A stretch of DNA of 63,365 bases from Haliotis rubra (taxonomy: Eukaryota): the NCBI RefSeq assembly GCF_003918875.1, contig NW_025766151.1, forward strand, positions 1-63,365, in the 5' to 3' direction. The notes beneath the pieces were generated by a model. The model saw only the letters and a program-made list of their open reading frames with translations. It ran no database searches and was not told where the DNA came from. A program made the translations under genes and the position numbers. The first letter of the stretch is position 1; each line of letters starts with the position of its first letter. Of the stretch, positions 39,180 through 63,092 are shown in pieces.

Positions 39180-42100
39180 TCATTTAAATTCATTCAAATT
39201 TTGGGAGGAATTTTTAAAATATCCAAATATTCCTGCCATGTAGGTAAAGATGGACCAAGCTCCCCGTTTCCTGACTGTGACTGCGTCGGTCTCTTTGTTG
39301 TGTGGGGAAGTATTCGAGCCTTCACACGGACTCCGGAAGTCCTGGATCAGCCAATCCATGGCGTCCTTAAGGCCCTGCCTGGAGACAACACTGCAGCCTA
39401 TAATGTTGGCCCCTGGAAGCATACATGTAAGTTCATTCACTTCGAAACGATCTCATTCAAAGCAGATTTTAATTCTCGCTACCGCTAAGCTAAGATCTTG
39501 GGACATTACAGACGACGTCAGAACCGTTCACTAGCTTTGAAAACACATCAATTGACTAACAAGAAGTCGATACAAGTTAACCGAGACATGTAATGATAGG
39601 CTAAAACTGTATGCCAGTTTTACCCACATGTTCTCAAAATTCTCTTCCTTTCAAAATGTTTATCCGAAGTAGTGAGAGATGAAAGTTTTGACCAGACTCA
39701 TGATGAACTGTCCTCTGATTTTTTGTCACTGGAGGCGAGAATTAAGATCTTATTTCAATAAGATTGTCAAGTACCTTCCTGAGGCACAACAATCAGTAAC
39801 TAGGGCATATATAATTGTTGGAAACAAAGTAAAGTCCAAGGCCCTAATTCTTCCTAGTAGAAACATGAACATTTTACAAGAATGTCTTGGTATTGCTTCT
39901 CTAATACGTTATAAACTGTAACAGCTATTCTGTTATAATATACTACCGACAAAAAATAAGGGGACAGATGAAATGATAGTGAATGTGAAATTGCTCTGAA
40001 TGTCCACTAAATCAAATGTGGGCGTAAAGTTCAATATCTGGTGTATCAACCATGTTGGATAACACATTCACGACACCTTGATGGCATACTGTTGATTAAT
40101 TTCCCGGATGGCTGCCCATGGTATTGCCCGCCATTCCTCCTGAAGAGCTGCATCAAGCTGGACCAGGTTGACGCGTGCGGGGTCCCTGGCGTACACCCTT
40201 CGACCGAGAATGTCCCATAGATGGTCAATTGGGGACAGGTCTGGGGACTGAGAGGACCAGTCCAATGTCTGTATGCCCTCTCGTCGGAGGATAAGCTGTG
40301 ACAATTTGGGCCCGATGTGGTCTGGCATTATCATCTTGGAATTCAGAATTCCTGCCGATGATCCTAGCCAGTGGAGTCACGACAGGACGCAAAATTTCGT
40401 CAACGTATCGCTGACCAGTAAAGGATCCATTAACGATGACCAGATCTGATCTCCTGTCATGTGTAACCCCGACCCACACCATGACACTATCACCCCCATA
40501 TCGATCATGATCAATAATTGCCGCTCTGGCATACCGCTCACCGCTACGGCGCCAACAACGTTTTCTGCCATCTGTGAATCTGAGGCAAAACCTTGACTCA
40601 TCTGAGAACATGGTGTAACGCCGATGGCGCAAAGCCCGTCCCTGATGCTGCCTAGCCCATGCCTATCTTTGGCGCCCTGAAAGGCCGCCTTGCTTTCAGA
40701 CGTGCTTGATTGAGCCGGTTTGTAACGGTTGAGTGTGACATTTGTCGCCCAGTGAGTGTACGGAATTCCCTATTGATGGCAGGTGCTGATTTGAACCTAT
40801 TGCGTAGGGCCATTAATGTAATGAGACGATCCTGTCGTGGTGTCGTTGATTTTGGTCTGCCACGCCCAGGTCTCATTGCCCACAGGCGAGAAATTACACT
40901 TTTTGATTTACCCAACATTCGGGCAACTTGACACAATGATGTCACCCCTTCTATCATCCCCACAATTCTCCATTTTGTTTGTTCATTGAGATGCTGCCTC
41001 GGAGGCATTTTTCAGCATGTGTTCAACTCTCTTGCATTAGTGATTGTGAGTTCTCCAATACGTTGACAGAGGTTGACTTGTGTGTGCACGTGCATCACGT
41101 GTTGGTAATGCTTCATGTGGAATTTCATTGTCATTGGATGTTGCGTTTGGGTGCAACGCTACGGTAACGCACCCTTTCACCTCTACGTTTGCTACATTCA
41201 GTTTCTTAGTTCCCTTATTTTTTGTCGATAGTATATATTATGACCGCGTAACCGCAGAGGAACACCATTATTTATGACCTTGAACAATATATTTCTGGAC
41301 TTTAAAACGAATGTAAACAATTGAATCATTAACTGTTGGTATTTTAATCAGATGGTTCCGCACATTAAAGACTGATGAGATAGAGCTTGAATAAACAAGT
41401 AGCAATTTGAGCTTTATCTCAACCTTCATCTCATTTCGACATATATAGGCGATAATTCCTTCCTGAAACTTACGGTGTGTCTTGAGTATGTTCTGGAAGT
41501 CCAGTGCCTCGGCAACCTCTGTTACTGTCATGGCGTCCCGTCGATCCTGTTTGTTGGCAAGGACGAGGAAAGGAATGTCCTTGTGGTCTTCATAATTTGC
41601 GGTAAGCCTCAGCTCCTCCTGAGCCTCCTGTATGCGTGCCCGGTCGTCGCTGTCCACCATGAACAGGACGACATCTGGGTGTGTGTAGTAGAACCGGCGT
41701 CTATACTGGAACTGGGGAAAACAACAGGTCAAAAGTGTGAACCAACGTGGCAATGCTCGACAATCCAGTGATCAATGTCATGAGCATCAATCTATGCAAT
41801 TGGGATGTGTCAACCAAGTCGGCGAGTCTGACCACCTGTTAGGTGACTATTACGCGTGAGTTTAGTTTTACGCCGCCTTTAGCAATATTCCAGCAGTATC
41901 ACGACGGGGGGACATCCGAAATGGGCATAACACATTGTACATTGTAGGGAATCGAACCGTGGTCTTCGGGGTAACGCTTACACCACAAGGCTACCCCACC
42001 GCCCGTCACGCCTGTCACGTAGCAGGGTAACACTGTGGGTGAGGGAATTACTTGGGTGTAGGCCGTTATTAATATTATTTTATCCATGTGTTAACGTGGC

Positions 42101-44076
42101 GTGTGCCCAAGGCGATAAAGACCTAAGACATTACACCACGCCAGTTACAACAAAAATGTGATTTTTGTCAACAAATATGCATACATGCACGCACCCACCA
42201 ACACGCACTGCCCGCTTTCAAAGTTTGCATGTTACGTTATTAACATCGTCAACTGAGATGCATGTCATAGAACTTAGTTTAATCCTTATCGACTTTACAT
42301 GCGCTTGACCATTGGCAATAATTAGTTAGAAAGTCACACGATCCTTGTTGTATAAGAAAACCGATAGATTGAAATAAATCATAAATTGTGAATATGTGAT
42401 ATTATAACATCCAAAGTTTAATTCTGATCTACCAAAATTTGGTATACACCCTTTGGTATAACTGACCACACGACGTCTTTGCTCAAAGTCAATCAGGGTC
42501 ACGTTGATGTTCTTGTAGAGTAGTGTCCATTTGGATTCACCTAAAACATAGTACGAAAACACTATTAGCTGATGCACAAAAAGAAAGTACACGCCTGATT
42601 CTATGGGATTATTATCCCAAAACAACGGCGCTGGTCGTAAATATGCTGAAAAGGTGTAGTGACTGGCTTACAAGCACACTTGCGTTACATCACTTCTAAA
42701 TACCCCTCATGGGCAAGTTACGCAGATATATAAGTTATCATGCTAAATACATTTTATCGTAAGAACCTACTCACAGAGGGTATGTCGTGTTGGCTGAAGG
42801 CCTTCTGACGTTATTCGGTGTAACAGTGACGTTTTTCCTGCATTATCAAGCCCTGGAAAATATAAGGACATATTATTGGATAGGACATGTTCACCTTACC
42901 ATCTAAAAGGCATACATATTTATGCATACTGGCTTCTTTCACGGGGTCTGGTGTCAGGTTTTTGCCTAAATATAAGTGGTTGAAACGAAGACAACAATAA
43001 CTCTTTATAAACGTTTGGTTCTTTTAATAATTTCAGGCTGTGAAGATCAAGGTGAGAATTGGTTTTCACTAACCCAGGCTTGTCATAAGTGGCAACTAAC
43101 GGGATCACCTGTTTAGGCTAAATGATTAGATTGATGCATGGATGCTCATGGTGTCAAATACTGGATTGTCTGGTCCAGCCACAGGAATAGCAGGGATATT
43201 TCTGATTGAAACAGTGGCAACAACAACAATAACAACAACTATCAGTTCGGTGATTTTGTTTTAATATGAAAGGTCATTTCAATAGTTATGAATAATGAGG
43301 ATTTATTGACACTGCCTGGTCAAAAGGACTGGCCTAATAAGGTTAATCGTACATGATTTAATGTCACTGTTTCGAAACGTCACACCCTGCTACCAAAAAG
43401 CAACAGACGTACCATGCTTATGCATGTATACATGGAATGTTGTTTGTTGAAGAATTTTAAGACATACATTTCTAAAAAACAAGGAGCGGTGGGGAAGCCT
43501 AGTGGTTAACGTGTTCGCTCGTCACGCAGAAGACCCGGGTTCGATTCCCCACATGGGTACAATGTGTGAAGCCCATTACTGGTGTCCCCCGTTGTGATAT
43601 TGCTGGAATATTGCTAAAAGCGGCGTAAGTCTAAACTCACTCACTGAGACACAGCAATAATGATTCCACTGAAGCGGCAACTCACTCACTCACTCCAAAA
43701 ACAAAACAAAAAATGATCCTTTGCGCAGGTTTCTTCAACAGCTCATTATAAATGTCAGTTTTAAAAAATGCGTGAAACTGTGAACATGCCAAAAATATAC
43801 CAGCCTACATTTGTCCCCTTGTAAAAAGGAACGCTTATATGGTATCAGTAAATCAGCACATTCTGTAAAATACATAGACTCTAACTACGTGAGTTTTCTG
43901 AGCCATAATTAGGAGGTAAATGTGTGACGTGTTTAGTCCACGTGCTTCTTTTGGTCATGCAGTCTTTTACTATGACTCGATGACTACCTTTAACGTAAAA
44001 GTACTATGTACATACCATGCATGAGAACTTTCACTTCCTTCCTTAGCCATGGCAGCATACTAATATATTGTCCCAT
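39180..44076 (-). CDS. ARF-like small GTPase, copy A: intact ~227-aa ORF with divergent switch regions and a C-terminal extension
   Basis: Exons 44016-44076, 42775-42852, 42467-42540, 41474-41711 and 39180-39412, all GT-AG and in frame. Reads MGQYIS..., GLDNAGKT, VLFMVDSDDRARIQEA, LVLANKQD, GCSVVSRQGLKDAMDWL. Confidence 0.9.
39943..41231 (-). mobile_element. Tc1-family DNA transposon (defective transposase) in intron 4 of ARF-like copy A
   Basis: TIRs ctaccgacaaaaaataagg / ccttattttttgtcgatag and TA TSD. HTH and GRPK motifs, MFSDES, QDDNARPH, SPDLSPIDHLW; frameshifts. Confidence 0.95.
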
Positions 44077-44478
44077 TTTGTTTATCGATTGTTGCCTGTG
44101 TCAGCTCTAAGCTCAGTACACCGTATACGTTCTTATATTCTGCCCGTCCTCTTCAGTACTACTTGAAATACAGCCGAGACGACTGGTGTGTATAAGTATA
44201 TATACATCGAGCCCACACCGTGGATTTCTAACTCTGTCAATAACACGTTGGCCGGGCGTACGTTACGGTAATTCCCGTGGACTGTTACTGATATCGGATA
44301 TTGATGTGGACACGGTCAAAGTACGCTATCTAAGGCAAACGTGATGCATTATCCACTATAACCTTACAGGCTGATATCGTGCAGTGAACACTCCGGAATA
44401 TGGTTTTACCGATACACAAAGTTTTATGATCGAATGATCGTCAGGAACGACTGTTATACCGCACTAATCTCTGTCTTT

Positions 44479-44640
44479 GTTTACCTATCAAATCGACGGC
44501 AGTCGGAAGTACATAACGGTCAATAGTCCAGGCGGCTTGGATCACTGAGCAAGAGCAGCATTCCCAGAGAACCAGGCTAAAATCCGTACAACTTAATAAT
44601 ACAAGCGCAGGTAAAACATCCACGGATATTTGCGTGACGC
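44479..44640 (-). promoter_or_regulatory. Conserved 5' non-coding exon/promoter of ARF-like copy A
   Basis: Donor AG|GTAAAC at 44484/44485 plus a CGGAAGT ETS-like motif; homologous to 49733-49830 and 55320-55425. Confidence 0.65.
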
Positions 44641-44840
44641 TTAGGATTAATAGGATTTATGAAGAATGTCCGTAAATGTTTTAATCTTTCAGTTTATAAT
44701 CATGTAGTTCATTTAGCTGTGTAAATGTCCTATTATCAATATATTTTTAGGAAGAATTTAGCAGCAGATAGATAGGTCTTCGTATTTTCACTGACACCGC
44801 AATTCATAGTCGCTATAAGAGTTAAAATGTCATATATACA

Positions 44841-45326
44841 CAGTCGTGCAAAAGGTATTCTGCACTTGACGTAATTTCCATAGACTTACAGGTTAATTTA
44901 GTGTAGCATAAATAATTTTCATGAATTTAATTTTTGTAAGATCCAAGTAATATTTTTGCAAATTTTTGAGGAATCATCTTACCTACAATCACATAATTTA
45001 TGTTTAATTTTCCGTTGCCAATTTATCGAATGGCAACAATTTAATTAACATATGTACAGTGCCGTGAACTCCTTTAACATGGCGGCCCATGGGAGTGTGC
45101 ATTGTGGAACCATACGTAAGTTGATAAATGTGATGTCATTAGTTAAATAGTGGTCGGAAAATTAAACTGAAATTATGTGCGCAGAGCAGAGATGATTTGA
45201 AATTTGCCTGTCAGTATTTTACAAAGATCCATCCCAAACTCACATCATGAAAATTATTCATGCTACACTAAATTAACCTGTAAGTGTATGGAAATTACGT
45301 CAAGTGCCGTATACTTTTTGCACGAC
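44841..45326. mobile_element. MITE with long (~90-bp) terminal inverted repeats
   Basis: gtcgtgcaaaa...gcacttgacgtaatttccata.acttacaggttaatttagtgtagcat and its reverse complement at ~45245-45326; TA-rich flanks. Confidence 0.85.
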
Positions 45327-46668
45327 ATACGCTTCAGCATCTCATGTAGTGCACGTTTAAAGCCAAATGCATAGATTATGCTATAAACAAACGCGTAGTG
45401 CAAAGCTTCTTCAGCAGTGATGCTTTTGTGTCAATGAGCATTTAAATACTCGCTTTAATCAAAGTTGGATAAAGTATATTTCATGTTCTACTGTTTTTTG
45501 CAATAACAGGATATGCTAAGTCAGCACTGCGCCGGAGTGTGAGTACCACATCCGTTTCAAATCTGAAAACTTTTCACCTTCGTTACAATCACAATCCGTG
45601 CAGTGATAACTTTTGCAAAGAACCGTGCAGTAGTCGGGACTGGTTGCGTTTCTAGTCAAAGGAGGTAATCGTGTCTATATGAGAGATCCACTGGTTTGTC
45701 CGTCCTAGAACTCTTAGCTCATCGCTAAACTTTTTTAAGGGTAGGTTGCCACATCTGTCGTGGGCTGACAGTGTACAACCGTGGGCTTGAGCTAATCACA
45801 TACACCAAACCAAAGTTATGCGTCTTGTCTCAAAGGGATTCTGTTTTGCAAACGGTAAATATATTACGAGAAATGTCAAAGGTTCAGTTTAAGTATATCA
45901 AAGTTCATGTGAGAGGAATGCTCTGGGACTCGAACTCGAAATGGGCCAGAATAACAGCCTTTATCCCTACATCCCTCAGTATCGCAGGCAAAAAATCTTC
46001 AATAGAACTTTGTGAGTTTCAGGACAACAAATACCAATTGCGTTTTAATGGCTTACAATATAGTTACGAATGTTCTTAACATTATGCGCGTAAGACGGAA
46101 TACAGCTTCGTCTTGGAAATGAACAGCGTTCGGTAGATATCTTTGGGTGTCGCATCAGTAATGGACGAAGATGAGTCACTTGTTTGGTACTTGCCATTGT
46201 TTACACTATTTTCACTTGCAACATAAACTAATGAATTCATCTGTTAATCATTCAAATCGTGTATAAGATTCAGATAATGTAATGACTGAAATTCCACATT
46301 CTACAATTAACAAAACGGCAAAATATTTCAGATATTTTAGAAAGTAGCCATCTATTTTATTACGATAGCAATTACATACATTTTGAAGTTCCCAGGGGAC
46401 TGAAAACGCCCGGATTAAAAGAAACGAAGTCAAGGTACATTTTGATGTGTGTTGTCTTCTAATCCCCTCACATAATTACCCTATTGTCAAGGAAGACTTC
46501 AATGCACTATCAGTTGTCAAAATGAAGAATTGCTAACCAGGAACCTATAACTAATGGTTTCGAACCAACGAAAATGGACTCATTCATTCAAGCCCTCTGT
46601 GCCCAGAACTGAAATTGGTCTCGAAGGTCTGCACAGACTACTGTGCTCATTATCCTACAAGTCTTTGT

Positions 46669-49609
<2,941 letters not shown>

Positions 49610-49732
49610 GTTAATGGGCACTGTTCAGAGAATTACACGGAAACAAAGTTATGTTGTCAGCTGTCACTGAGCGAATGACACAATCATCGTCAATAACGAC
49701 TGTTACATATACCGCCCCCATCTCGTATGTTT

Positions 49733-49830
49733 GTTTACCTGGCAAATCCACGATGGCCGGAAGTACGTCACGGTGTACAACAGGGAGAATCATGCAAGCG
49801 CACGTAAAATATCCCTGGCAATGCGCTTGA
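49733..49830 (-). promoter_or_regulatory. Conserved 5' non-coding exon/promoter of ARF-like copy B
   Basis: Donor at 49738/49739, CCGGAAGT at ~49757, acceptor at 49621-49622 just upstream of the ATG. Confidence 0.65.
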
Positions 49831-50360
49831 AATACTTTAAGTCAAGCAGAATGCTCATATTACCAGTATGTTTGGACGATATCATAACGACTGAGTTTTA
49901 TTTATTCAACTTTTCGTCTTCGTAAATGGATATATATTTCAGGTATCGTTCTTCCCATACAGCTGGGTCTGTCTATAAATATAGGGGAATACAGTATTTG
50001 CGGTCGGATGAAATGTTGGCATATTATGTTTCCAAACCTGAAACAGCTGTGAGCTTCCTCGAGCTTACCAACAACGCAAAATTGTTTGTTGAGCGAAGGT
50101 GTCGTGAAAAGAAAATTCAATGTTCGCTTTCATACATTACATCTCACATACAACTAAATACCATATAATAAATTATTAATGAATTATATGGTCTCTGATA
50201 CAACAAATTGGCAGATTGTATAATCTGTTGTATCTTCACCTGGTTCTGGCATGTCTAAGGGACGTAGAACCTCATCGAGCGACCTGGCTACGTACGTATC
50301 TGTGAGAGAATTGGGTTTACAGCTGCTCTGAACAGTATGTGGTTGTGACATCACATATCA

Positions 50361-50683
50361 GGGGCGGTGGTGTAGCTCAGTGGTTAAAGCGTTCTCTCGT
50401 CACGCCGAAGATCCAGGTTCAATTCCCCACATGGATACTGACTGACTGAGTTTAGTTTTACGCCGCAGCAAATGTCCAACCATCACGGCGGGGACATCAG
50501 AAATGGGCTTAACACATTGTGCCCATGTGGGGAATCGAACCGGATCCTCGGCGTGACGAGCCAACGCTTTAACCACTAGGCTACCCCACCGCCCCCACAT
50601 GGATACAATTAGTGAAGCCCATTTCTGGTGTCCCCCGCCGTGATATTGCTGAAATATTGCTAAAAGCGGCGTAAAACCATATT
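50361..50683. mobile_element. SINE family 1 copy (-) nested in a SINE family 1 copy (+)
   Basis: The host is split at CACATGGATAC, which is duplicated at ~50428 and ~50596. Confidence 0.85.
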
Positions 50684-53600
50684 CAGCTTTAGTGACGCAC
50701 GCTGGGCTCTTTCCCGTTTATCCATGACAAATAGGAGTGATGCATTTGAACCAAACCTGAGTTGATCCTGACACAACAAAGGGACGGAACTGCATTGCGA
50801 TCCATTATATCCATGTGATGCACGTAATTGTTCCGATTCTCCCTAAGGTATTGGTTGGCACGCGGGATTTAATATTTTTCGCTGAGTTGGAAATATAGCA
50901 GTCATGTGTAGCGGCATTAGTTAACTTCTTTGCTAGATGCACCTAACTGTACATGGCTGAAACTTGCGTTCCATCTTTGTAAAAACTGCTGGTTGCTGGT
51001 CCGAACTCCACATTCACAAGGCCTTTAAGGGACATTATCCACTTTGGTGACCAAGAACTGCTTTCAGGCAACGATATTTAATCCAATGAATTTGTGAAAC
51101 AAATGATTCCTTTTATGTGTAATTTACACAGTGATGCAATATGTCGGTACATCGGTCAATATACCGTTTCATATAACAAGAACAATTTTAAAATGCGCAT
51201 ATAATCAAATACAACCATAAATGATGATTGCAGTGTACGTGATGAAAAAAACAGATACGTCATGAACTAAACAAGAATATCTTGTTAAGCTCCCATGCAA
51301 GCTTAAATCTGTCTAGACTCACTTAAGTATGGAAATCATTTCTGAGGCAAAACAGTTTTCTATTCTTTATTAACCAGTGGACACTTCTTGGGGTGAATCT
51401 CATATAGTAATCTGGAGGATGAACAGCTCATGCTAAAATCGAATGACAAGTGCCATGTTATACTCAGTCAGTAATATACATATACATTGTGGTCGGTGCT
51501 GCATTGGTTCCGTTCAGTTGAGACGAGCTCAGTTCTGGGTTCCCAGCAGTCGTATTTGGAAATAAACCACGACCTGTTATCACAGTAAGCTATTGTGCCC
51601 ATTATCATACAAGCTGGAGTTCAACCCAGCTTCGGTATGAACGCTTTCAGGGACTCCAGTGGTCCTTTCATGTAGGTGGACAGAGACCAGGGAGACTTTT
51701 CTGTCTTCTTCCCCGAAGACCCATCTGTTTCCGGGTCACTAGGGTTAGCATCCGGGCGTTTCAGTGACCTCCCGTGGACAAGTGCCTGTGACATCCAGTG
51801 CAGGGCGTCATAAAGACCCTCACCAGAGATAGCACTGCACGCCATGACTGTCGCTTCTGAAATAAGACATTTGAATGAGTTTCTCTCATTATAGCTAAAC
51901 AATGACGTCATACTGTAGCTCACCTGGATATGTAGTCAACAGATAATGTTCATATTGTCAAAGTGAGTGAGTGAGTGAGTATGGTGTGATGTCGCCTTAG
52001 CAATATTCCAGCCCATATGATGATGGGGAACACAAGAAATAAGCTTCACGCATTGTACTCATGTGGGGAATCGAACCCGGGTCTTAACCACTAGGCTACC
52101 CAACGCCCCTCAAAGTGTCAAAGGCGAACTGTGCATATACATTAAACCAATACATGGAATAATACATGTCTTAATGTATTTTCTCCAAATTCAGTCTATA
52201 GATATTTTAGAATTCATTCTCTTTCACAAATACTTATTAATTCCTTGTCTGTCATATTTTTTAAACAAGATATACTGTAAGAAAGAGGACTCACAAAGCT
52301 CATCCAAATACGAAATTATACACTATGAACAAAAACTGATCATTGCATTTAGCATTTCATGGCGGTATCTGAGTTCAAACATGTATAAGAAGTTTCACTT
52401 AACGCATTCTTTATGGTGCATCTAATGATATACCAATTATATATTCCTCATCTTACTATGTGTTTTCTCAGTATCCTCGGGAAATCCCACTGCTCGGGGC
52501 AAAACCCTGGTACTGTCACTGCACCCGAGATAGTCCTGCTTTGTTGGCGAGGACGAGGAAGACAGCGTCCCTGGAGGTCCCCTGCCCCTCAACCAAGCGT
52601 CCCAGCTCATCTTTGGATTCCCTCAATACGTTCCCCTTCGTCGTCGCTGTCAACCAATGTAAAGAGTACGGCGTCGGTGTTTGGGCAGTAGTGGCGATAC
52701 AGAGGGACGCTAAATTCGACAAAAAGACATTTCATCATTGAATTCCATGTTTGGTCAGGATTGTTTATAAAGGTTGAAATGGAGTGACGACGATGACATA
52801 AGCATATTTGGTCGCTATTAGGATATCGTGCAAACATATAACAACCACTCTTTGTAAGGCATTAGGTAACAAACCTGTGTGGGTACATTACGTGTTTCAC
52901 TGATTTCTGCACATTGCAACCTTTGGGAATCGAACCGGTCTTCGTAGCGAGATGATCAACCGCCTTAAGCACCGGCATACTCCCACCGCCCCCTGAGTAT
53001 CATGAATATGGGTGAGCTATAAATGCATACTTCCAAAACACGCGTATCGTGTGATCTGTGCATTATTTATTTCAATCGATTGCACCAAACCACACCCTCA
53101 GACACTTGGTTAGAATCGGTCTTCACCAACTCATGCTTACTGTAATGGACAACAAACGGGATCGCGGCAAGGGTCACTCGACCCATTACATATGTCATGT
53201 CATTACGAAGATTGATGTTCATGATATCAGTCACTGGGGATTGTCTGGTCCAGACTCGATTATTTACATACCGCTGTCATATAGCTGGAATACTGCGGAG
53301 TGCGGTGTTAAATAAACAAACACGACAAAGGAGTATCCCAAACTTACGATTTTACCCCTTCCACCTACATCCCAGGCTGTTATGTTGACGTTCTTGTATC
53401 TAACTGTCTCCACATTGAAACCTGAAGTTACAAAACAAAATCTGTATTCAATCTTTTTGGAGGGACAAACCCAAAACTCTTTCGATGAGCTATGTATTGC
53501 AGTGAATGAGGATAGGAAGTTTACAGTTACGGGTTGCCAGTGTAAAGGGTGACCTGAAGATGGCAAATCGCCCTGTTTCCATCATACATGGAACAACAAA

Positions 53601-53719
53601 TCATCTGACTGTTACAGCAGGCCCTGCATGGCTGATCTATCCTTCATAGGAATATTTCCGAATATGTGTAAAGTTTCATTAAAGGATACCTGTTTGTTTT
53701 AGTGATATTATACAAATAT

Positions 53720-53846
53720 ACTGAACAACATTAGAAACGCACCACCCATATAATACGAAATATCCCCGTCAGACTGAAATGTACCATGATATCTGAGCAA
53801 TCGGCGCAGTACCTTATGTGGTGCGTTTCTATTGTTGTTCAGTATA
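53720..53846. repeat. Imperfect inverted repeat (MITE remnant)
   Basis: tactgaacaacattagaaacgcaccac ... gtggtgcgtttctattgttgttcagta. Confidence 0.7.
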
Positions 53847-53887
53847 ACAAACAATTAATACAGACATATTCATACCTGATGGGATAA

Positions 53888-54268
53888 TGAGGTGTGGTGA
53901 GGTGAAATTGGGCTTAACGTCGTGCTGAGAATATTCTCGCTCATAGGACGACGTGCATGTGTATGTGTGCGTGCGGGTTGCTTTGTACCTAGCCCAGACT
54001 TACGCTGGTTTTATTAGTGTTAGCTCCAATTGAGATACATATGCCGCAGTGAACCATATTGAATTCTACCAAATATTCAGACACATATCATTATACTGAC
54101 CTGAGCTGACAGTCCTTTATTGTTGTACCCATTAATGCCGAGCACCAGGTAGGGACCAACAAGTACCATATTTTAACGTCCTTTGGTATGACGCGGTCGG
54201 GGATCGAACCCGCAACCTTCGTTTCTCCGGCAGACGCTCTGGAATCAATTACACCACGGAGGCGGTCA
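53888..54268 (-). mobile_element. tRNA-derived SINE family 3 (Meta/MESC-like core, (CACCT)n tail)
   Basis: Reverse-complement B box gggttcgatccc and core ccgcgtcataccaaag. Related pieces at ~1860-1941 and ~60640-60890. Confidence 0.7.
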
Positions 54269-55319
54269 ATGGGATAATGGAACCCAAAAAGATGATGAAT
54301 TATTAAATATATATCATTGAAAATTTAAAATATTTCGAGCATTTCTTAACTGTGGCCCTTTAATGGATCCATTCAAAACATTTATGCATTTGGTAAACTC
54401 CCCGGAAGACAATAATTTCTTCTACCAATTGTTGGAATGGCAAATAACCCTCCGAGTTTTAGCATGTACAATAGTGGTTTTCCCGGCAGCATCGAGCCCT
54501 GAAAGAAAAATTGTAAAGCGTATCATCCTTAATTTGATAAAACACACCCTACAAATATTTTTTAAAAAATCACTGAAAACAGATCGTGTATAAGTTTTTT
54601 GAATTCCAAAGTGCAAACAAATATAAAGCAGGAAAGAGAATGATGATTTTAAGAGGGGTCGTTTTTCTGGGAGGCTAAGTTTTACATATGACATGCAAAG
54701 GGTGGGGTGTCACTCACTTTTGCTACACAAAATTTAGTAGTACCTGCCAAGCACGAAACTGTACTTCATGTTTGTTGATCAGTGTAAGGATACTAAATTC
54801 GCTTGCGCGTGACGCAGCAGAGGTTGGGTCGCAACCCAGTGTGGGAATTTGGAGGGATATATCGTCCGGGTAGTCGTGGGCAAAACAAAAGCAACAACAT
54901 ATGTATTGGTCTGACCGAGGATTCGTGACTAATGTACCTCTTTGACATTTACTAATTGGAACTATAGAAGCAAACGTAAATAAAAACAAACTTACGAGAA
55001 AGTAAAACAAAATGACTATACCTACCATGCATGAGTGATCCTGGAATTTTCTCTTCTTCTTAAACCATCCAAGTTTTGGCGAAATACCGCCCCATGCTGA
55101 GCCAGGTTAAAACACACAGGAAATACTATTTAGCTCTTTCACAAATCTCAGTAACTCGTTGTTTTGAGAATTACTTGACTTGAGGTGTATGTATTGACAC
55201 ACACCTGGGTATGTGCAACGTTCTTCTTTATCAGCTGCCGTCGTTTTTTGAAGAATGCGTAAACAGCATAATCGCTTTCGTTGTTAATATCCAGCGCTTC
55301 ACTACTACCACGTGGTTTT

Positions 55320-55425
55320 GTTTACCTGTCAAATCCACGGCGGTCGGAAATCTGTTGCGCCGTATAATCCGGATATGTGAATTACAGGAAGATACATAAA
55401 ATATACACGCTCTAGAAACGTCCAA
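55320..55425 (-). promoter_or_regulatory. Conserved 5' non-coding exon/promoter of ARF-like copy C
   Basis: gtttacctgtcaaatccacggcggtcggaaat, homologous to the blocks upstream of copies A and B. Confidence 0.6.
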
Positions 55426-57039
55426 ACTGGCAAGGTTCTGAAAGGTCTAACTTGAATGAAGATGTCTGCCAACGTGACAGTCGAATGTAAACGGTCAAAT
55501 TCAATAACAGAACCAAACCTTAGCTGTCCGGACCCAGGAGAGATACTAATCCAGTGCAGTGTGGGATAAGCTCGCTTTCAATTCCTATGTAAGTACTGAT
55601 TATCCAGGAAAGGTTAACTAACCTATAAACGAGTTTGAGACGTACGCCACGCACACACAACGTCGCGACAAGTAGGCTGTTAGAACTAAAGACGCCGAGA
55701 AAGCACAAATGTTCATTTTCAAATACATATATGTTTTGCACTATGATACAAAAAATATCCATGGTCCAAATTTCTGTATCTTCTCCCACCGTGAAGATCA
55801 GGGTTATAGAATTTATCTTCAGTAACCCATGTTTGTCGTAAGAGGCGACCAACGGGATCGGGTGGTCAAGCTCGCTGGACTTGGTTGACACATGTCATCA
55901 TATAGCTAGCTGGTGTGTAGATCGGATGTTCATGCTCTTGGTCATCAATGGATTGTCTGGTCCAGACTCGATTATTTGCTGGTATCTGCCATATAGCTGG
56001 AACATTGCAGAGTGCAGCATAAAAATCCACACCTACCTATCTGTATCTTCTCTGCACTGTTTTACAAAGAAACACGTGGAACAAATGGTATTATGGTCCG
56101 TTGTTTTTATTTTGTACAATATAGATCTATTACGGTAAAATATTTAACATTCGAAAAGTATTTTTGTTAGGACATAAAATGTGTACACATGTATTTCATA
56201 GAAAATTCTTCAATACAACATAACATTTGCATTTCAGGAAGTTAATAGAGCGAAAGAAACCACATAAATAAAGCATTGCTATCATACATAACATTTTATA
56301 TTTTGTCATTCTTTTCAAAGGTCCAAATTGTTGCTATTAGGTAAAATGTATATTTGGTAAGGATTCAACAAGAACGACATATGGAAAAATATAATACTTG
56401 GTATATATAACATGGTGCAAATATAATAACTTGGTTTATATAACACATGGTACAACATAATATTTGGTGTATATAACATATGATAAATATAATACTTGGC
56501 ATAAATCAAACTATTTTTTATCATCAAGAGGCAAAACTGATAATCTCAAGCAACATTTCAAGAGAAGTCTCTGATGTAACCAGGTAAATTCTATATTTGG
56601 TAACGATTCCAACGCTCACTGATCTCGTTATATGTTCTAAACCAGACCTAAACAAGGTTGAAAACGAGTGCCACGAGAACTACATATCCTATATATGATA
56701 CTCTGGTTCTACCTAAAGGGACCCTCCACCCATTATATTTATATCACACTTAGGCCAAAACAGATAAACCCAAGTGGCATTTTAAGTGGTGTCCTACCCC
56801 ATCTGTTTGAGTAGGTAGAATCTATCGCAGGCAGCACTTGGTGTACATCGTCATCATGAAAGTGCTACATGCCAGTTTGTATATAAAACGTCTTGGGAAA
56901 CAATTAATCAATTAATCTTCATTTCATACATACATGCTTCACAAGAGGTAAAATTCATCTCTCTAAATAGAGGGATCATCAAGACTGTTCAAGAGGGTCA
57001 AGTTCTCATATAATACATCAAGTTCCTTAAAAAGTTCAC

Positions 57040-57770
57040 ATAATGCAGAGATATCTACATCTAGAGCAAATTATACTTTAGGTCCCTTTACAACCACTCT
57101 AGATTTCCAACTTCAGAAGTCCCATTTCACACAGAAGAGGTCCAATTCTCATATAGTTCACATACTGGTGAAATATTCTACCGTTCAGGAGTAGATTATA
57201 TTTTGTGTCCCTTTACAACCACTCAGATAATCAACATGGTGGTAGTTCCATTATTAGTAGAAAGAGGTCCAGTTCCCTGCTATAGTCTTCACATGGTAAA
57301 ACATTCACAATCTAGAAGAGAGATAGTATTTTGTCCTTTCACAATCACTCTAGATTTCCAACAACATGAAATTCCATTACACAGAAAGAGGTCCAGTTCC
57401 TCATATAGTTCAATATAATGGTGGAAAAAAAGATCACATCTAGAAGAGATAGTATTTTGTGTCCTTTCGTACAATCACTGACTTCCAAATAATGGTAGTT
57501 CCACATGAAAGAGGTCCAGTTCCTCATAGTCTGCCATAATGGTGAAACATTCAGCATCTAGGAAGATAGTATTTTGTGTCCTTTCACAATCACCTAGGAT
57601 TTCCACAGATGGTGTCTCATTACACAGAAAAGACGGGGTCCAGTTCCCTCATATAGTTCACATAAATGCGAAATATCTACATCTAGAAGAGAAAAGCATT
57701 TTGTGTCCTTCACAATCACTCTAGATTTCAACATGCTAGGTTCCATTACACAGAAAGAGGTCCCAGCTTT
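57040..57770. repeat. Degenerate ~115-120-bp tandem repeat
   Basis: Recurrent catctagaagagatagtattttgtgtcctttcacaatcactctagatttcca...ttacacagaaagaggtccagttcc. Confidence 0.85.
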
Positions 57771-60700
57771 CAGCTCATCAGGCTGGATCACAGAATGTTG
57801 TCAAAAATCTTTTAGATTGTGTACATTATCACCATTCGTTGTGATCTTTAGTCGGGCTTTGTTTGAGAGTGATTTTCCCAGATCTACTGGTGCCTCCCCT
57901 GCCTGACCTGAACGCATACACCCTGGACGGCATCACGAGCCCACTCCTTCACCTCCGTCCCCCTTCCCTCCTGAGCGTTCTTTCTCCCCGGCCTTCTGGC
58001 CTCCTTCCTGCCCTTCTTCCCGCCCTCCTGCCTCTTCTTTAAAGGTCCTCGTAACAACTTCGCCTGTTGACGATCCCAGTGCCGACCTGTTTCTGTGACT
58101 TTGGCACCAGGAACTTTCCTTGACGACACGTGGAATCCATCGTCAGCCGCACTACGTGGTCTGGGTTAATGATGATCTGGCTCTCCCGAACTGTGTACAC
58201 CATGACCCCAACCTCCTCCTCCTCACTCTGGTGCACTGACTTCCCGATTGGTAGCCGAAGGGGCGTCAGCCTGAGAGAAGTGGGGTCGCCATCACTGGTA
58301 ATGCAGGGAGCGCATATACCTTCTTCTTCTTTATTCCAGTTTCTGAGACAATTTCCCGCTGTGGTCGACTGCCAAGAAAATAGTAGTCTTATCCCTGACC
58401 GTCGCTTTCTTTGTGGACTCGAACAGTTTTAAACCGAGAGAATTCAACTACTGAAACCATATTCCCACCGTTTGCGTCAATCCACGCGGCTATTGATACA
58501 CCCCATTCTCAGTGTTCAGTGGAAGATAACAGTCGTCGTATCATTGCGACATAGTGACATGGAACGCCAAACAAAGTATCCAATTGTGCCCAGCGCCACA
58601 TCAGTTGACTGCGCCATGGATGTCGTTCCATGCGAATGACTTTAGGTAATTTACGGGCGGCCGAAGTCTGTGAATGCCAAAATGGCAATGGCTGGCCAAT
58701 CACGACGTCGCCTCCTGAACGGATATGTAATTGCATGAGTCGCTTTTAAAAAGGTATACATGAATATATTACACCTACTTTTAAGACAAATGGTTAGTAT
58801 TCAATTAAAAATCAAGAATTCCAAAACATACACATCCAGTGCTTCATATATTACAGCCAGGAAATGGTGGCGTGCCTTTAACAATGCTAACAACGGGTAA
58901 TAATCATAGGTAAACTGAACAATCTGCAAATTGTGTTAGAATCCCACCCCACTTCAAACGCCACAGTACGTAAAAGATGTAGAGTACAAGCAATTCTAAT
59001 TATTACTGAAACAAATTATACATTTTACATATCTAACTACTCCATCTATTTATAAGTAAGTTTGAACTTCAATAGGGATATAAGGAAAGTTATCCCGTTT
59101 TATTAATTTACATTTCTATTGAAACTTATCAAACTTATTGAAGTTCATGTACCGTTAGGATATAGTTATACGCCCAATACTGATATGGTGTTCGTTTTGT
59201 CAAATGTAACAATGGCCAGAAAACAGAAATTCTTTATCAAGTCGTATTGGCTTCAGTTATTTTAATAGTTACCGAGATCCTATATGGTTCTTTTCGGGAT
59301 TGTCAGCTCATTAATGATATAGAGTGAATACTCTGATCACTGCTAACACTACGATACTAGACTTAAAATGACTGAAAATAGTGATCTCATGGCATTCAGT
59401 TGGATATCCGGTATCCAGTTGATATCCGACCAATATGTCATTGCATCACCTGTGAGTATGAATCTGTTGATGTCAATACGATATATTATAATATAGCAAT
59501 GACATACATACGTAATGTACGTACGTACGAGACATTTGTAAAATTGACTGCCTGAGAGTGTAGGAGATAGGGGCTTGTAACGCATAAAATCTTCCGAGTT
59601 GTCCCTTTAGCGTTATGTCCCTTAGGTAATGAATGCTAGAACTCCTCCCAGCGTAATCTCTTTGGTTACACACTCTGCACTGTGTAGGAGCTGTACCAGT
59701 TAATGTGTGTGCGTGCGTGAGTTACCAGCAAAGTTCTCTTTAATGTTAAGGAAATACTTATACACAGTTACTCAGTTATTTGAATCACTGACCCATTCTT
59801 CAGAGACTTTCCTACTCCTGCAAGCAGCAAGTGGGGCTTTTCCAATTCCCCACAAACTCCAAGGCATAAGAAACTAAATTCAGTAAAATTAGGCGATTTC
59901 TTTCAGAAAAACTCATTGCAGAAAAAAAATAAACACAGAAACAATTTGAAAATTTCAAATAATATACTCCAAAGAACCCAAGAATACTGACGACATTGTT
60001 GTACATTAAAATGAAAGAATCTTTAACTGTAAGTAAGGCCTCCTGACCCAGTGGACTAAAGAATGTTACAACTCCAAGAGAATGCAGAAAATAATAGTTT
60101 ATTACAATTAAATTGTTTTCATGTTGTAAAATGTCCTGGTACAAAATATAATATAAAACAATATCAATAAATGTTTAATCAATATCCAAAAATATTTTTA
60201 ACCATAAATAGAAATGTCATCACAGCAAGGCACGGAGCAATGAACATAATTGTATCATTATCACTCCAGTGTATTACATGTAGACCTGTGCATTGGAGTG
60301 GTGGGGAGAAAGGTCACTACTCCTCACAAGGGAACAAGTAGAACATAATAGTTTTTAAGTGCATGGTGTCTTGATATTTGCAAAGAAACTCTGCACTTAC
60401 AATCACAAGTCACAATAATACACATGGTGCTATCATACACCTGTGCATTGATTTATAATGGAAACGGAGTCTTGCAAGCCGCCTGGTACATATTGTAGTA
60501 AGTTATACATGGTGGTTACCAGCACCAGTGAGCACACCGACCACCCATTGTCAATATCGATGTAAACGTGACTTCGCGAAAACACATGTATATATATAGC
60601 AGTACAAAACAACAAAAGATCACCGTAAGTGTAGTGTTAGAGCCCCTACCTCGAAGTGCCTGGTCTGATCCCAGACCGCCATACCAAAAAGACGCTAAAT

Positions 60701-61369
60701 ATGGTAATTTGTTATCCCTGCCTGGCCGCATTAATGGGTACAAGGACTGGTTGGTCTGAGTCATAATGTGGTCTGAGTGGGGTGTCATGCTTCACCATGT
60801 ATGGTATCTCAGTATTAAAACGGTGTTCAGCTTCACCCTGGCTAGTACAAGCCGCATACACACACACAGCACGACGTCATTAAGGAGCTTAAAATATTCT
60901 CAAGCACTCCACATTAAAAAAAATTCCACCACCACAAAACAATTAAGTCTCCATCAGGTAAACCCATTACTGATAAGTATCAGGCACTATCAAGCATGTC
61001 TCCTCCCTATCCAGTCCTATCAGTCTTGGGTTGAAAGACCAGCATGGGCCAACGGACCCAAGTTGTTGCTGCTGCAATTTCAGAGGAACCCATGCTTGCC
61101 GGTGGTCAGGCTAGCCTATCTGGTGGACACACTTCATATATCCCATTCAAGCGTAGAGAACGTATGCCCATGCTGTTGATCAGTGATTTTCTGGTCTGGC
61201 CACTCCATTTCCTCCAGACCGGGTGCTATAAAGTTGAATATTGCCAGAGTGGTTTTCAAATAACAAAACAAACTAAAAAATCCCGGAGCACAGACCATCA
61301 GGATGATCATAGTCATATCACAGAATGCTCTCCTTACAAGTCACCACAACTTGTCAGCACACCCTTTTG

Positions 61370-63092
61370 AAAGTGGTAACCGTCCCTTTACATAAGATGA
61401 GACCGCCCAGGTTTCAAGTCATTGTCTGAGCCTTCCTTTTGCATGAAGCCTCGACCACGCTTTCCTCTGTTTCCTCAGTTTGTAGGCGAAGACCAGGGTT
61501 GGAACCAGTACCTAGACTTTGGTACAAATTTCACTTAGCCAATCCAATGTTCTTGCTTCAACTTGACCTTCAGGGTCACTGCTGAACATCCAAATATGTT
61601 CATTCCTGGTAGACAAAAAATTGGAAATGATGTTAGCATGAATACAAAGGTCATTATTGATTACCACGAATTATCCTTAGCTCTCAGACATAAGCTGTCT
61701 TGTAAAAGCATGTATTTTCTAATAATTATCCTGTTTGCATGACATCTGCATATACTGCTTGTATGACAACTGTCAGTATCGGACCCATGACGTAAACTGA
61801 TACTGCATGGATGACTACTGACAATAATGCATGACATCTGCATATACTGCTTGTATGACAACTGTCAGTTTCGGACCCATGACGTAAACTGATACTGCAT
61901 GGATGACTACTGACAATAACGCATGACATCTGCATATACTGCTTGTATGACAACTGTGAGAATCAGACCCATGACTTAAGCTTCTACTGCTTGTATGACA
62001 ACTGACAAATGAGAGCCCTTGACATCAGCTCAAGTTTCTTGAATGACAACTGACAGACCAAGACCTAAGGTGGTAAATGAAGCTCTGGTACATTCAATCC
62101 CATTCAATCCCATGACATAATTCACACTACTTACATTAAAGCCAACAGGGACCAATGAGTTTTGACTAAAACTAACACAAAAAATACTCACTTCTCATAG
62201 AATATCCATAATGACATAAATTCTCATAGTTCATCTTTCATGTGATTTCCTCCTCCACTCATGCTTGGGACTCCATAGGTCCTGCTTGTTGGCCAGAAGC
62301 AGAAAAGACAGTTTCCCTCAGCTCATCCTCCATCAACGCTTTCTTCACCTCATCAGCTATCTCGTCAAACTCTTTCCCGATCAGTGCTGTCTATGACCAA
62401 ACATCACAGCTGATGTCATATGGTAGTAGTAAATGAACGAAAGGACGGCAGGGAAATAGAAAATGTTTTGTTTGTTTTGTTGTTGGGCGCTTTTGCACTC
62501 AACCATTTTCCTACGCAATATGATGTCAGTTTACCTTAAATAACCTGGCGAATGGGGTAGCCTTGTGGTTAAAGCGTTGGCTGGAATCAAAAGCCAAAGG
62601 CCGTGTTCGATTCCCACATAGGTACATTATGTGAAGCCCATTTCTATTATTACGGCCATGATATTGCTGGAATATTATTGCCAAAAAGTGGCATAAGCCA
62701 AACTTACTAACCGACTGTGGTGCGTATGAGGGATGGGATGTGTGTGGTAGTGTGTAACTTTGGTGGTTATGGCAATTGATTCCCCACATGGGTACAGTGT
62801 GTGAAGCACAGTTCTGCAATTGTTCCATGTCGTGATATTGCTGGAATATTGCCCAAGGTGGTATAAAGCCATACTCACCTACCCAATAATGGTTGGGATG
62901 ACCCAATCTTCATTTACTTGACTTGACTCTTTGATGAGTCAAAACCTTTAAAAGTATTTAAATTGTAAATGGCTGTGTAAAACACCAAACCGTCAAGTCG
63001 GCTTGTTAAACTACTCACCTGTTTATCCCTCTCCAGAGCATCCCATGCAAAAATACTGATATTTTTATGTGTAAATCGCTCAACATTGAAGC
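61370..63092 (-). pseudogene. ARF-like small GTPase, copy D (exons 3-5; 5' exons beyond the right edge; many indels)
   Basis: Exon 63019-63092 (GFNVERFTHKNISIFAWDALERDKQ; 74 nt like its paralogs), ~62192-62447 (YYYHMTSAV..VIDSTDRE..LANKQDL, frameshifted) and last exon from 61605 (MNIFGCSAVT...LDWLSE). The 3' end is uncertain. Confidence 0.75.
61736..62050. repeat. Tandem repeat, 92-bp unit (dimer of ~46-bp subunits), in the last intron of ARF-like copy D
   Basis: tgcatgacatctgcatatactgcttgtatgacaactgtcag... recurs at 61736, 61828 and 61920. Confidence 0.9.

What the first reader, a model, noticed from the sequence alone, without database searches (positions are those of the whole stretch)
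39180..63092. Tandem array of at least four divergent ARF-like GTPases, all with Arg in place of the catalytic Gln71
Seen: four minus-strand paralogs share exon structure (exon 3 is 74 nt in A, C and D, and 73 nt in B). Their G3 regions read IDFEQRRRV (A), WDVGGRSAV (B), WDVGGRGKI (C) and WDALERDKQ (D), so Arg always sits at the Q71 position of ARF1 WDVGGQDKI. Established: ARF1 Gln71 is needed for GAP-stimulated hydrolysis, and Q71L locks ARF in the GTP state. Inference: this is a lineage-expanded, rapidly diversifying ARF subfamily that is hydrolysis-deficient or uses a different mechanism. Birth-and-death duplication beside a TLR is compatible with host-pathogen conflict, for example as decoys for ARF-dependent toxins or effectors.
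Basis: partly seen in the sequence, partly recalled or inferred. Interest (0 to 1): 0.82.

Follow-up and report, generated by a model that had tools for sequence, protein, structure and literature searches.

The report
Abalone Arl20 GTPase gene cluster
The four tandem ARF-like genes are the abalone copies of Arl20, an old invertebrate-wide ARF-family GTPase that normally has arginine where ARF1 has its catalytic glutamine, so the arginine is inherited and not a local invention.

Summary
Four ARF-like genes (D-C-B-A) lie in tandem on the minus strand, share one five-exon structure, and all have Arg at the ARF1 Gln71 position.

The Arg is not lineage-specific. The copies belong to Arl20, a holozoan ARF paralog named by Vargova et al. 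2021 (PMC8358228). Its published sequences, from Capsaspora to amphioxus, read WD[VI]G[GSL]R and carry a C-terminal extension. Of the 15 I read, 14 have Arg. The window genes share Arl20's gene structure with a hemichordate and a sponge: three introns absent from a scallop ARF1 plus one shared with it. They also group with Arg-type proteins in trees.

The four paralogs are old. The order C-B-A recurs in Haliotis asinina and D-C-B in H. rufescens. All tested pairs are under purifying selection (dN/dS 0.22-0.37).

Copies B, C and D look broken as assembled. Short-read contigs contradict all four of B's listed indels, and applying them restores a 227-aa ORF, so these are assembly errors. C and D are unresolved. 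A C-type mRNA is spliced in a sister species.

Copy A is intact and conserved but has lost the DxxG glycine, so it is a likely pseudo-GTPase. No evidence supports host-pathogen conflict. Arl20's biochemistry is untested.

The parts
39180..44076 (-). Copy A (Arl20 A-type). It is an intact 225-aa ORF in 5 exons: 44076-44016, 42852-42775, 42540-42467, 41705-41474 and 39412-39180. The P-loop reads GLDNAGKT and NKQD is kept. G3 is degenerate (IDFEQR), so the DxxG glycine and Trp66 are lost. Tc1/mariner remnants lie in intron 4 (40068-41008).
   Evidence: Spliced model with canonical AG/GT sites. An intact 222-aa orthologue exists in H. asinina (L013 17458-20140, G3 = MDFGQR). dN/dS is 0.37, with pN 0.122 against pS 0.283, Fisher p = 9e-6. 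Exon 4 matches Pfam Arf at 62.9 bits, and the transposase HTH is also seen.
46669..49609 (-). Copy B (Arl20 B-type). Exons are 49609-49540, 49029-48952, 48141-48069, 47661-47427 and about 46901-46669. G3 is WDVGGR. It is frameshifted as assembled but intact once the read-supported indels are applied.
   Evidence: Short-read contigs add a base after 48111 and after 46865, and drop 1 base at 46784 and 2 at 46755. With these four edits the gene reads as a 227-aa ORF ending ...KALLPKLG. It is 85% identical to H. asinina P0005. dN/dS is 0.22.
51621..55095 (-). Copy C (Arl20 C-type). Exons are 55095-55026, 54498-54426, 53421-53348, 52709-52457 and 51856-51621. G3 is WDVGGRGKI. Exons 3 and 5 are clean. 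Exons 1, 2 and 4 carry many indels as assembled.
   Evidence: DNA alignment to H. asinina and H. rufescens C-type exons. Short-read support drops over exon 4, with X1 depth 25 and X3 depth 0 in 52460-52659. RNA-like contigs of a sister species cover exon 5 plus the 3'UTR (51283-51856) and join an exon-4 sequence directly to exon 5 (X24 records 18 and 23).
61344..63092 (-). Copy D (Arl20 D-type), 3' part only. Exon 3 is 63092-63019 (WDALERDKQ), exon 4 is about 62400-62214 and exon 5 is about 61600-61344. Exons 4 and 5 contain stops and frameshifts as assembled. Exons 1-2 lie beyond the contig end.
   Evidence: tblastn with ARF1 and with the H. rufescens D-type exons. An annotated 269-aa D-type gene lies upstream of the C-type gene in H. 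rufescens; only its exons 4-5 are in the fetched locus (L014).
30268..32289 (-). Neighbouring single-exon Toll-like receptor (673 aa, LRR + TM + TIR). It is context only and not part of the family.
   Evidence: Pfam LRR_8 (6e-20) and TIR (1e-12).

Best explanation
The stretch is the abalone Arl20 locus. It holds four tandem, anciently diverged paralogs (order D-C-B-A on the minus strand) of Arl20. Arl20 is an ARF-family small GTPase that arose from an Arf1-like gene before animals and was lost in vertebrates.

Shown here: family membership, gene structure, conserved gene order among Haliotis species, purifying selection, and that Arg at the Gln71 position plus a roughly 45-residue C-terminal extension are family-wide traits.

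Inferred mechanism for B, C and probably D:
- They are N-myristoylated (MGQ... start), membrane-cycling GTP-binding proteins with intact G1, G2, G4 and G5 motifs.
- They lack the glutamine that positions the hydrolytic water. They are therefore probably slow, or insensitive to canonical ArfGAPs, and long-lived in the GTP state. Alternatively they need a different catalytic partner.
- The extension is a flexible polar linker ending in a short hydrophobic/aromatic helix (PWSLSTYMKG.LESLKAFLPKLG). It may act as a second membrane or partner contact.

Copy A keeps the P-loop, NKQD and the tail motif but has lost the DxxG glycine and Trp66. It is most likely a nucleotide-binding protein that no longer switches, that is a pseudo-GTPase retained by selection.

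The apparent breaks in B are assembly indel errors. Those in C and D may be too.

The confidence of 0.85 is for the identification as the Arl20 cluster. The inferred hydrolysis mechanism alone would rate about 0.4.
For: Family:
- The closest proteins are 227-228-aa Haliotis proteins with WDVGGR and the same tail.
- Arg-type proteins with a C-terminal extension occur in hemichordates, sponges and metagenomes.
- Published Arl20 sequences have the same G3 and tail.

Introns: LMx|GLDAAGK (phase 1), PTI|GF (phase 1), GGRxKI|RPLY (phase 0) and one phase-1 intron before the G5 region are identical in Haliotis and Ptychodera. Oscarella has three of the four. A scallop ARF1 shares only PTI|GF. This matches the paper's description of three unique introns plus one shared with Arf1/4.

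Trees:
- All 24 Arg-type rows fall on one side of a branch, with SH-aLRT 93. Support is 76 on the G domain alone with column 71 removed.
- The Haliotis copies form one clade with support 98-99.

Age and selection.

Assembly errors in B.

Transcription of the C-type gene in a sister species.

Tail: it is disordered with short helices in AF2, and a hydrophobic tail recurs across phyla.
Against: - No published Arl20 sequence was placed in my trees, because they had no reference id and I did not type them. The link rests on reading them and on proxies from the same phyla.
- I could not read the paper's intron figure (supplementary fig. 11), so identity of the three 'unique' positions with mine is inferred.
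- Support for the Arg-type clade is modest on the G domain alone (76).
- No biochemistry exists for any Arl20, so the hydrolysis-deficiency step is analogy only. From memory, the LRRK2 Roc domain has Arg at this position and still hydrolyses GTP.
- Expression of A and B in this species was not shown. The two RNA-like runs showed no cover of B's exon 5.
- C and D may truly be pseudogenes in this species.
Confidence: 0.85

Rival explanations
1. The array is mostly decaying pseudogenes. Only A is intact. B, C and D carry real frameshifts and stops and evolve neutrally in this species.
For: As assembled, the copies are broken in these ways:
- B has a stop after a 73-nt exon 3.
- C has a stop in exon 1 and indels in exons 2 and 4.
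- D has stops in exons 4 and 5.
Against: - All four listed frame-breaking indels in B are contradicted by short-read contigs, and the corrected ORF ends at the conserved LPKLG.
- A GT10 gene in the same contig is also split at an A5 run.
- Short-read support collapses exactly over C's noisy exon 4.
- B- and C-type orthologues are intact in two or three other Haliotis species, a 269-aa D-type gene is annotated in H. rufescens, and dN/dS for B and C is about 0.2.
- A C-type mRNA is spliced in a sister species.
Confidence: 0.12
2. One reading: a lineage-specific, fast-evolving, hydrolysis-dead ARF subfamily shaped by host-pathogen conflict, for example as decoys for ARF-dependent toxins or effectors, linked to the neighbouring TLR.
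For: - Abalone has at least 4 copies, against 2 in Lottia.
- dN/dS of 0.2-0.4 is, from memory, much higher than for Arf1.
- Copy A sits on a very long branch.
- A TLR lies 7 kb away.
Against: - The Arg predates animals.
- The paralogs are old, with 1:1 orthologues and conserved order.
- All pairwise tests show purifying selection, not positive selection.
- No immune-expression data were examined.
- One adjacent TLR was not tested for significance; from memory, mollusc genomes carry many TLRs.
Confidence: 0.07
3. This is a mechanistic rival. Arg71 is not a loss of function. It works as a built-in arginine finger or charge-stabilising residue, which gives Arl20 GAP-independent intrinsic hydrolysis and makes it a self-timed switch.
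For: - Arg is strictly conserved across roughly a billion years, which argues for a positive role.
- From memory, GTPases with a non-Gln residue here can still hydrolyse: Sar1 has His, Rap has Thr, and LRRK2 Roc has Arg1398.
- The TRIM23 ARF domain has Lys here.
Against: - From memory, Ras Q61R is strongly GTPase-impaired.
- No structure or kinetics exist for Arl20.
- AF2 cannot place the side chain relative to the nucleotide.
Confidence: 0.25

Closest known systems
Arl20 (Vargova et al. 2021, Genome Biol Evol 13:evab157, PMC8358228)
   Same: - Arf1-derived G domain with Arg at the Gln71 position.
- MG start.
- C-terminal extension with a hydrophobic tail.
- Four-intron gene structure, three introns unique and one shared with Arf1/4.
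- Found in invertebrates and unicellular holozoans and absent from vertebrates.
- Two genes already reported in the gastropod Lottia.
   Different: - Abalone has at least four tandem paralogs.
- The A-type has lost the DxxG glycine (DFEQR / DFGQR). None of the 15 published Arl20 sequences I read shows exactly this, although several have S or L at the preceding glycine.
- The paper's main text does not comment on the Arg.
Arf1 / Arf4 (canonical ARFs)
   Same: About 53-57% identity. The G1, G2, G4 and G5 motifs are the same. Both have N-terminal myristoylation glycine and share the PTI|GF intron.
   Different: Canonical ARFs have Gln71, about 181 aa, no C-terminal extension, and different remaining introns (QNTQ|GLIF and ANKQ|DLPN in scallop ARF1).
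TRIM23 (ARD1) ARF domain
   Same: It is an Arf1-derived domain with a basic residue (Lys, WDVGGKHK) in place of Gln71.
   Different: TRIM23 has RING, B-box and coiled-coil domains in front, has Lys rather than Arg, and lacks a myristoylated start. The window genes start at MGQY directly before the G domain.
Ras Q61R / Arf1 Q71L (GTP-locked mutants; own knowledge)
   Same: The water-positioning glutamine of switch II is replaced.
   Different: Those are pathological or engineered single mutants. In Arl20 the Arg is the conserved wild-type state, with co-adapted surroundings (RPLY in place of RPLW, and the tail).
Arl19 (the same paper)
   Same: It is the other invertebrate-only Arf-like paralog. 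It is also expanded in this genome, as an array on contig C2298.
   Different: Arl19 keeps Gln (WDVGGQ), has the VSPCKG insert, and has no long tail.

Membership tests
Arl20 | Forms a clade with Arl20 sequences, separate from Arf1, Arf4 and Arf6 | tested here: met
   The 24 Arg-type rows, including window A and B, fall on one side of a branch from 24 Gln-type ARFs. SH-aLRT is 93, or 76 with the tail and column 71 removed. Caveat: the published sequences themselves were not in the tree. Proxies from the same phyla were used (Ptychodera and Glandiceps for Saccoglossus, Oscarella lobularis for O. carmela). No Arf6, Arl1, Arl5 or Arl19 rows were included.
Arl20 | Three family-specific intron positions plus one shared with Arf1/Arf4 | tested here: met
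   Four introns lie at identical positions and phases in the window copies, H. asinina, H. rufescens and Ptychodera. Oscarella has three of them. Scallop ARF1 shares only PTI|GF. The paper's figure was illegible, so identity with its three positions is inferred.
Arl20 | Arg at the Arf1 Gln71 position (a shared trait, not a stated definition) | tested here: met
   All 4 window copies have it. Of the 15 published Arl20 sequences I read, 14 have it.
Arl20 | C-terminal extension beyond the G domain ending in a hydrophobic/aromatic segment | tested here: met
   A, B and C have 45-50 residues after DWL, ending in WS..TYMxG...F/L. Comparable tails occur in most of the published and retrieved sequences I read, from hemichordates, sponges, amphioxus, Lottia, Capitella and Capsaspora; three of the four choanoflagellate sequences lack one.
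Arl20 | Taxonomic range: holozoans other than vertebrates | tested here: met
   The named Arg-type hits among the two top-120 lists are only molluscs, hemichordates and sponges (plus unnamed metagenome and transcriptome sequences); no vertebrate is among them. This agrees with supplementary table 3.
Canonical ARF (Arf1/4/6) | Catalytic Gln71 in WDVGGQ, and a protein of about 180 aa with no tail | tested here: not met
   The copies have Arg in place of Gln and are 225-228 aa with a tail.
TRIM23 | RING, B-box and coiled-coil domains N-terminal to the ARF domain, with Lys at position 71 | tested here: not met
   Exon 1 encodes MGQY... about 20 residues before the P-loop. The residue is Arg, not Lys. 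Upstream sequence showed no further coding exon.
Functional GTPase switch (copy A only) | DxxG motif with the invariant glycine in switch II | tested here: not met
   Copy A reads IDFEQR in the window and MDFGQR in H. asinina. The glycine aligned to Arf1 G70 is Gln.

The most novel reading that the evidence does not exclude
Arl20 as a whole is a naturally 'Q71-less' ARF whose conserved Arg defines a different hydrolysis or regulation mechanism. In abalone it has in addition produced a selected pseudo-GTPase paralog (A-type: DxxG glycine lost, P-loop and NKQD kept, dN/dS 0.37) that works with its switching sisters from the same locus, for example as a regulator or scaffold.
Probability: 0.3. 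Interest if true: 0.55.

Novelty: new member of a known kind. Interest (0 to 1): 0.33.

Why it matters
Arl20 is a named ARF-family paralog with no functional study. It is absent from vertebrates, flies and worms, so it has been ignored.

- **Arg as a family hallmark.** The replacement of the catalytic glutamine by arginine holds across the family from filastereans to amphioxus. That gives a concrete biochemical question: is the protein GTP-locked, self-catalysing, or served by a new GAP?
- **Material for tests.** The abalone cluster offers four diverged paralogs, including a probable pseudo-GTPase under selection.
- **Assembly warning.** This contig carries frequent indel errors that mimic pseudogenes. 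This matters for any gene-decay claim made from this assembly.

Tried and rejected
- **Pseudogene-array reading.** This was my first guess at 60%. I dropped it for B after the reads. It stays open for C and D.
- **Other copies in this genome.** Searches with exon 4 and with the tail found none outside contig C1261.
- **Word search with the tail alone.** It found only Haliotis proteins, so it says nothing about wider conservation of the tail.
- **Profile word search.** Mis-fused double-ARF gene models dominated the top of the list. It was still useful for picking out Arg-type proteins.
- **AF2 model of the C-type protein.** The tail has pLDDT below 50 and no docking is predicted, so it gives no mechanistic insight.
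- **Literature.** 'Arl20' occurs only in the defining paper. 'Q71R' with Arf gave nothing relevant.
- **RNA evidence.** No listed run is on record as RNA. Two RNA-like runs of a sister species support C-type transcription but show nothing on B's exon 5.
- **Big representative search.** I did not run it.
- **Published Arl20 sequences in a tree.** I did not type them in, because they had no reference id.
- **Careful IQ-TREE run.** It did not finish in time, so the quick trees are reported.
Full report
**What is there**

The window is a whole 63,365-bp contig (C1261) of a 1.378-Gb, 2,855-contig genome. The best protein hits are 72-82% identical Haliotis proteins, so it is an abalone genome. The assembly size and contig number match my memory of the H. 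rubra assembly, but I did not verify this.

Four ARF-like genes lie head to tail on the minus strand:
- A, 44076-39180
- B, 49609-46669
- C, 55095-51621
- D, 63092-61344, whose 5' end runs off the contig

Each gene has five coding exons:
- an MGQY... start exon
- a 78-nt P-loop exon
- a 74-nt G2/G3 exon
- a roughly 235-nt exon
- a roughly 230-nt last exon, which carries the G5 region and a 45-50-residue extension

Aligned to an ARF1 of the same genome (L001), Arg occupies the Gln71 column in all four copies.

**What family it is**

A word search with B's exon 4 returned intact 227-228-aa proteins from H. asinina, H. rufescens and H. cracherodii. These have WDVGGR and the tail ...KSPWSLSTYMKG.LESLKAFLPKLG.

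The same search and a profile search also returned Arg-type ARFs with C-terminal extensions from hemichordates (Ptychodera, Glandiceps), sponges (Oscarella, Dysidea, Ephydatia, Corticium) and metagenomes. In total, 26 of the 220 retrieved proteins have Arg at this position, 21 of which were long enough to use in the trees.

Vargova et al. 2021 (PMC8358228) defined Arl20 as an Arf1-derived group in unicellular holozoans and invertebrates, recognised by three unique introns plus one shared with Arf1/4, and lost in vertebrates. Lottia has two Arl20 genes.

I read 15 Arl20 sequences in the paper's supplement:
- Fourteen have Arg at this position: Capsaspora WDIGGRGG; Monosiga and Salpingoeca WDVGLRSA and FDVGGR; Amphimedon WDVGGRDK and WDVGSRSK; Lottia WDVGGRDK and WDIGSRDK; Capitella; Saccoglossus; and Branchiostoma a and b.
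- Only the Ciona sequence has Gly.
- Most carry a tail ending in a hydrophobic/aromatic stretch.

The paper's main text does not mention the Arg. No other paper in the library mentions Arl20.

**Membership tests**

*Introns.* Exact spliced mapping gave the same four intron positions and phases in H. asinina B and C, H. rufescens C and Ptychodera. The exon sizes 78 and 74 nt are identical among them. Oscarella has three of the four positions. A scallop ARF1 shares only the PTI|GF intron. The window copies have the same boundaries.

*Trees.* In a tree of 50 rows, all Arg-type proteins fall on one side of a branch from Arf1/Arf4-type proteins, with SH-aLRT 93. Support is 76 when only the G domain is used and column 71 is removed. 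The Haliotis copies form one clade with support 98-99, and A sits on a very long branch.

*Caveats.* I did not place the published sequences themselves in the tree, because they had no reference id. I also could not read the paper's intron figure.

**Age and selection**

H. asinina has C-B-A in the same order and orientation (L013). H. rufescens has D-C-B (L014).

A's orthologue in H. asinina is an intact 222-aa ORF with canonical splice sites and G3 = MDFGQR.

| Pair | dN/dS | Fisher p (pN vs pS) |
|---|---|---|
| A (window vs H. asinina) | 0.37 | 9e-6 |
| B (read-corrected window vs H. asinina) | 0.22 | 7e-11 |
| C (H. asinina vs H. rufescens) | 0.23 | 1e-12 |

Orthologue dS is about 0.36. 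Paralog dS is 0.9 for B against C and above 2 for A against B or C.

The four genes are therefore old, retained paralogs and not products of recent birth and death. Their evolution is constrained, though from memory less so than that of Arf1.

**Are B, C and D broken?**

As assembled, they are. I laid contigs on 46660-52659 from a DNA run of the same organism (X1), a sister species (X3) and two RNA-like runs.

For B, the reads differ from the assembly at four sites:
- They add a base in the A-run at 48111, so exon 3 becomes 74 nt.
- They add a base at 46865.
- They remove one base at 46784.
- They remove two bases at 46755.

With these four edits B reads as a 227-aa ORF that ends at the conserved ...KALLPKLG and is 85% identical to H. 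asinina P0005. The exon-5 acceptor then has to be taken 4 nt downstream (GGAG|CC), unless the run of G's there holds one more error of the same kind, which the listed read differences could not show.

Three further points suggest poor local assembly quality:
- A GT10 fucosyltransferase on the same contig is split at an A5 run.
- Over C's noisy exon 4, short-read support drops to 25 in X1 and 0 in X3.
- C's exons 3 and 5 are clean.

I conclude that B's breaks are assembly errors. C and D are unresolved, and I lean towards errors there too.

**Transcription**

The RNA-like runs (sister species) cover C's exon 5 and 3'UTR but not the neighbouring intergenic or intron DNA. One 675-nt contig joins an exon-4 sequence directly to C's exon 5, which indicates a spliced C-type mRNA. 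Nothing was seen on B's exon 5. Copy A could not be tested.

**How it probably works**

B and C keep GLDAAGKT, the switch-I Thr, DVGG, NKQD and a CA[ST]-like G5 motif, so GTP binding is expected.

The water-positioning Gln is replaced by Arg. By analogy with Arf1 Q71L and Ras Q61R (my knowledge), this predicts slow hydrolysis that canonical GAPs cannot stimulate. Strict conservation of Arg, rather than any non-Gln residue, leaves room for a catalytic or regulatory role for the Arg itself. The TRIM23 ARF domain has Lys at this position.

In the AF2 model the tail is a low-confidence linker with two short helices at 210-221. Hydrophobic tails recur across phyla. A second membrane or partner contact is my inference.

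Copy A keeps GLDNAGKT, NKQD and the tail motif but has Gln where the DxxG glycine should be, in both species. It is likely a selected pseudo-GTPase.

**Verdict**

The central inference is not: the Arg is not a lineage-specific, conflict-driven novelty. These are abalone members of a known but unstudied family in which Arg is the norm. The modest expansion and the A-type variant are the only new points.

Noticed in passing
G000:C2298 (for example 82394-83012, 149622-150262, 204110-204721, 415077-415693); loci L005-L009: There is a large tandem array of Arl19-like genes, with at least 15 exon-level Arf hits on one 838-kb contig. They read VSPCKGVNFTVWDVGGQ and [17 protein letters not shown]. This expansion is much bigger than the Arl20 one. 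An earlier first-reader note describes an ARF + TRIM-NHL cassette in this genome.
   Followed up: partly
window 24592-25759 (-): A GT10 alpha-1,3-fucosyltransferase is split into two overlapping ORFs (N-terminal and C-terminal Pfam domains) at an A5 run. This is probably an assembly indel error like those shown in copy B.
   Followed up: partly
window 46660-52659: The contig differs from short-read contigs of the same organism by many small indels: 12 are listed and 38 more are not shown, within 6 kb. Frameshift-based pseudogene calls on this assembly are unsafe.
   Followed up: yes
window 40068-41008 (-): Tc1/mariner-type transposase remnants (HTH_Tnp_Tc3_2) lie inside intron 4 of copy A.
   Followed up: partly
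window 47060-47460, 48260-48900, 50260-50860, 51860-52260: Very high-copy short interspersed repeats lie in the introns and spacers of the cluster. Summed contig depth there is 10^6 to 10^7. They are also abundant in the RNA-like runs.
   Followed up: no
G000:C2234:1810639-1811106 (L004): This is an intronless ARF-like ORF with Lys at the Gln71 position (WDVGGKDNMRPLWKSY). It looks Arl4-like and its C-terminus appears truncated or altered.
   Followed up: no
window 2795-5944 (+) and 11437-11949 (-): These ORFs look like non-LTR retrotransposon (reverse transcriptase / endonuclease-like) fragments. They were not analysed.
   Followed up: no
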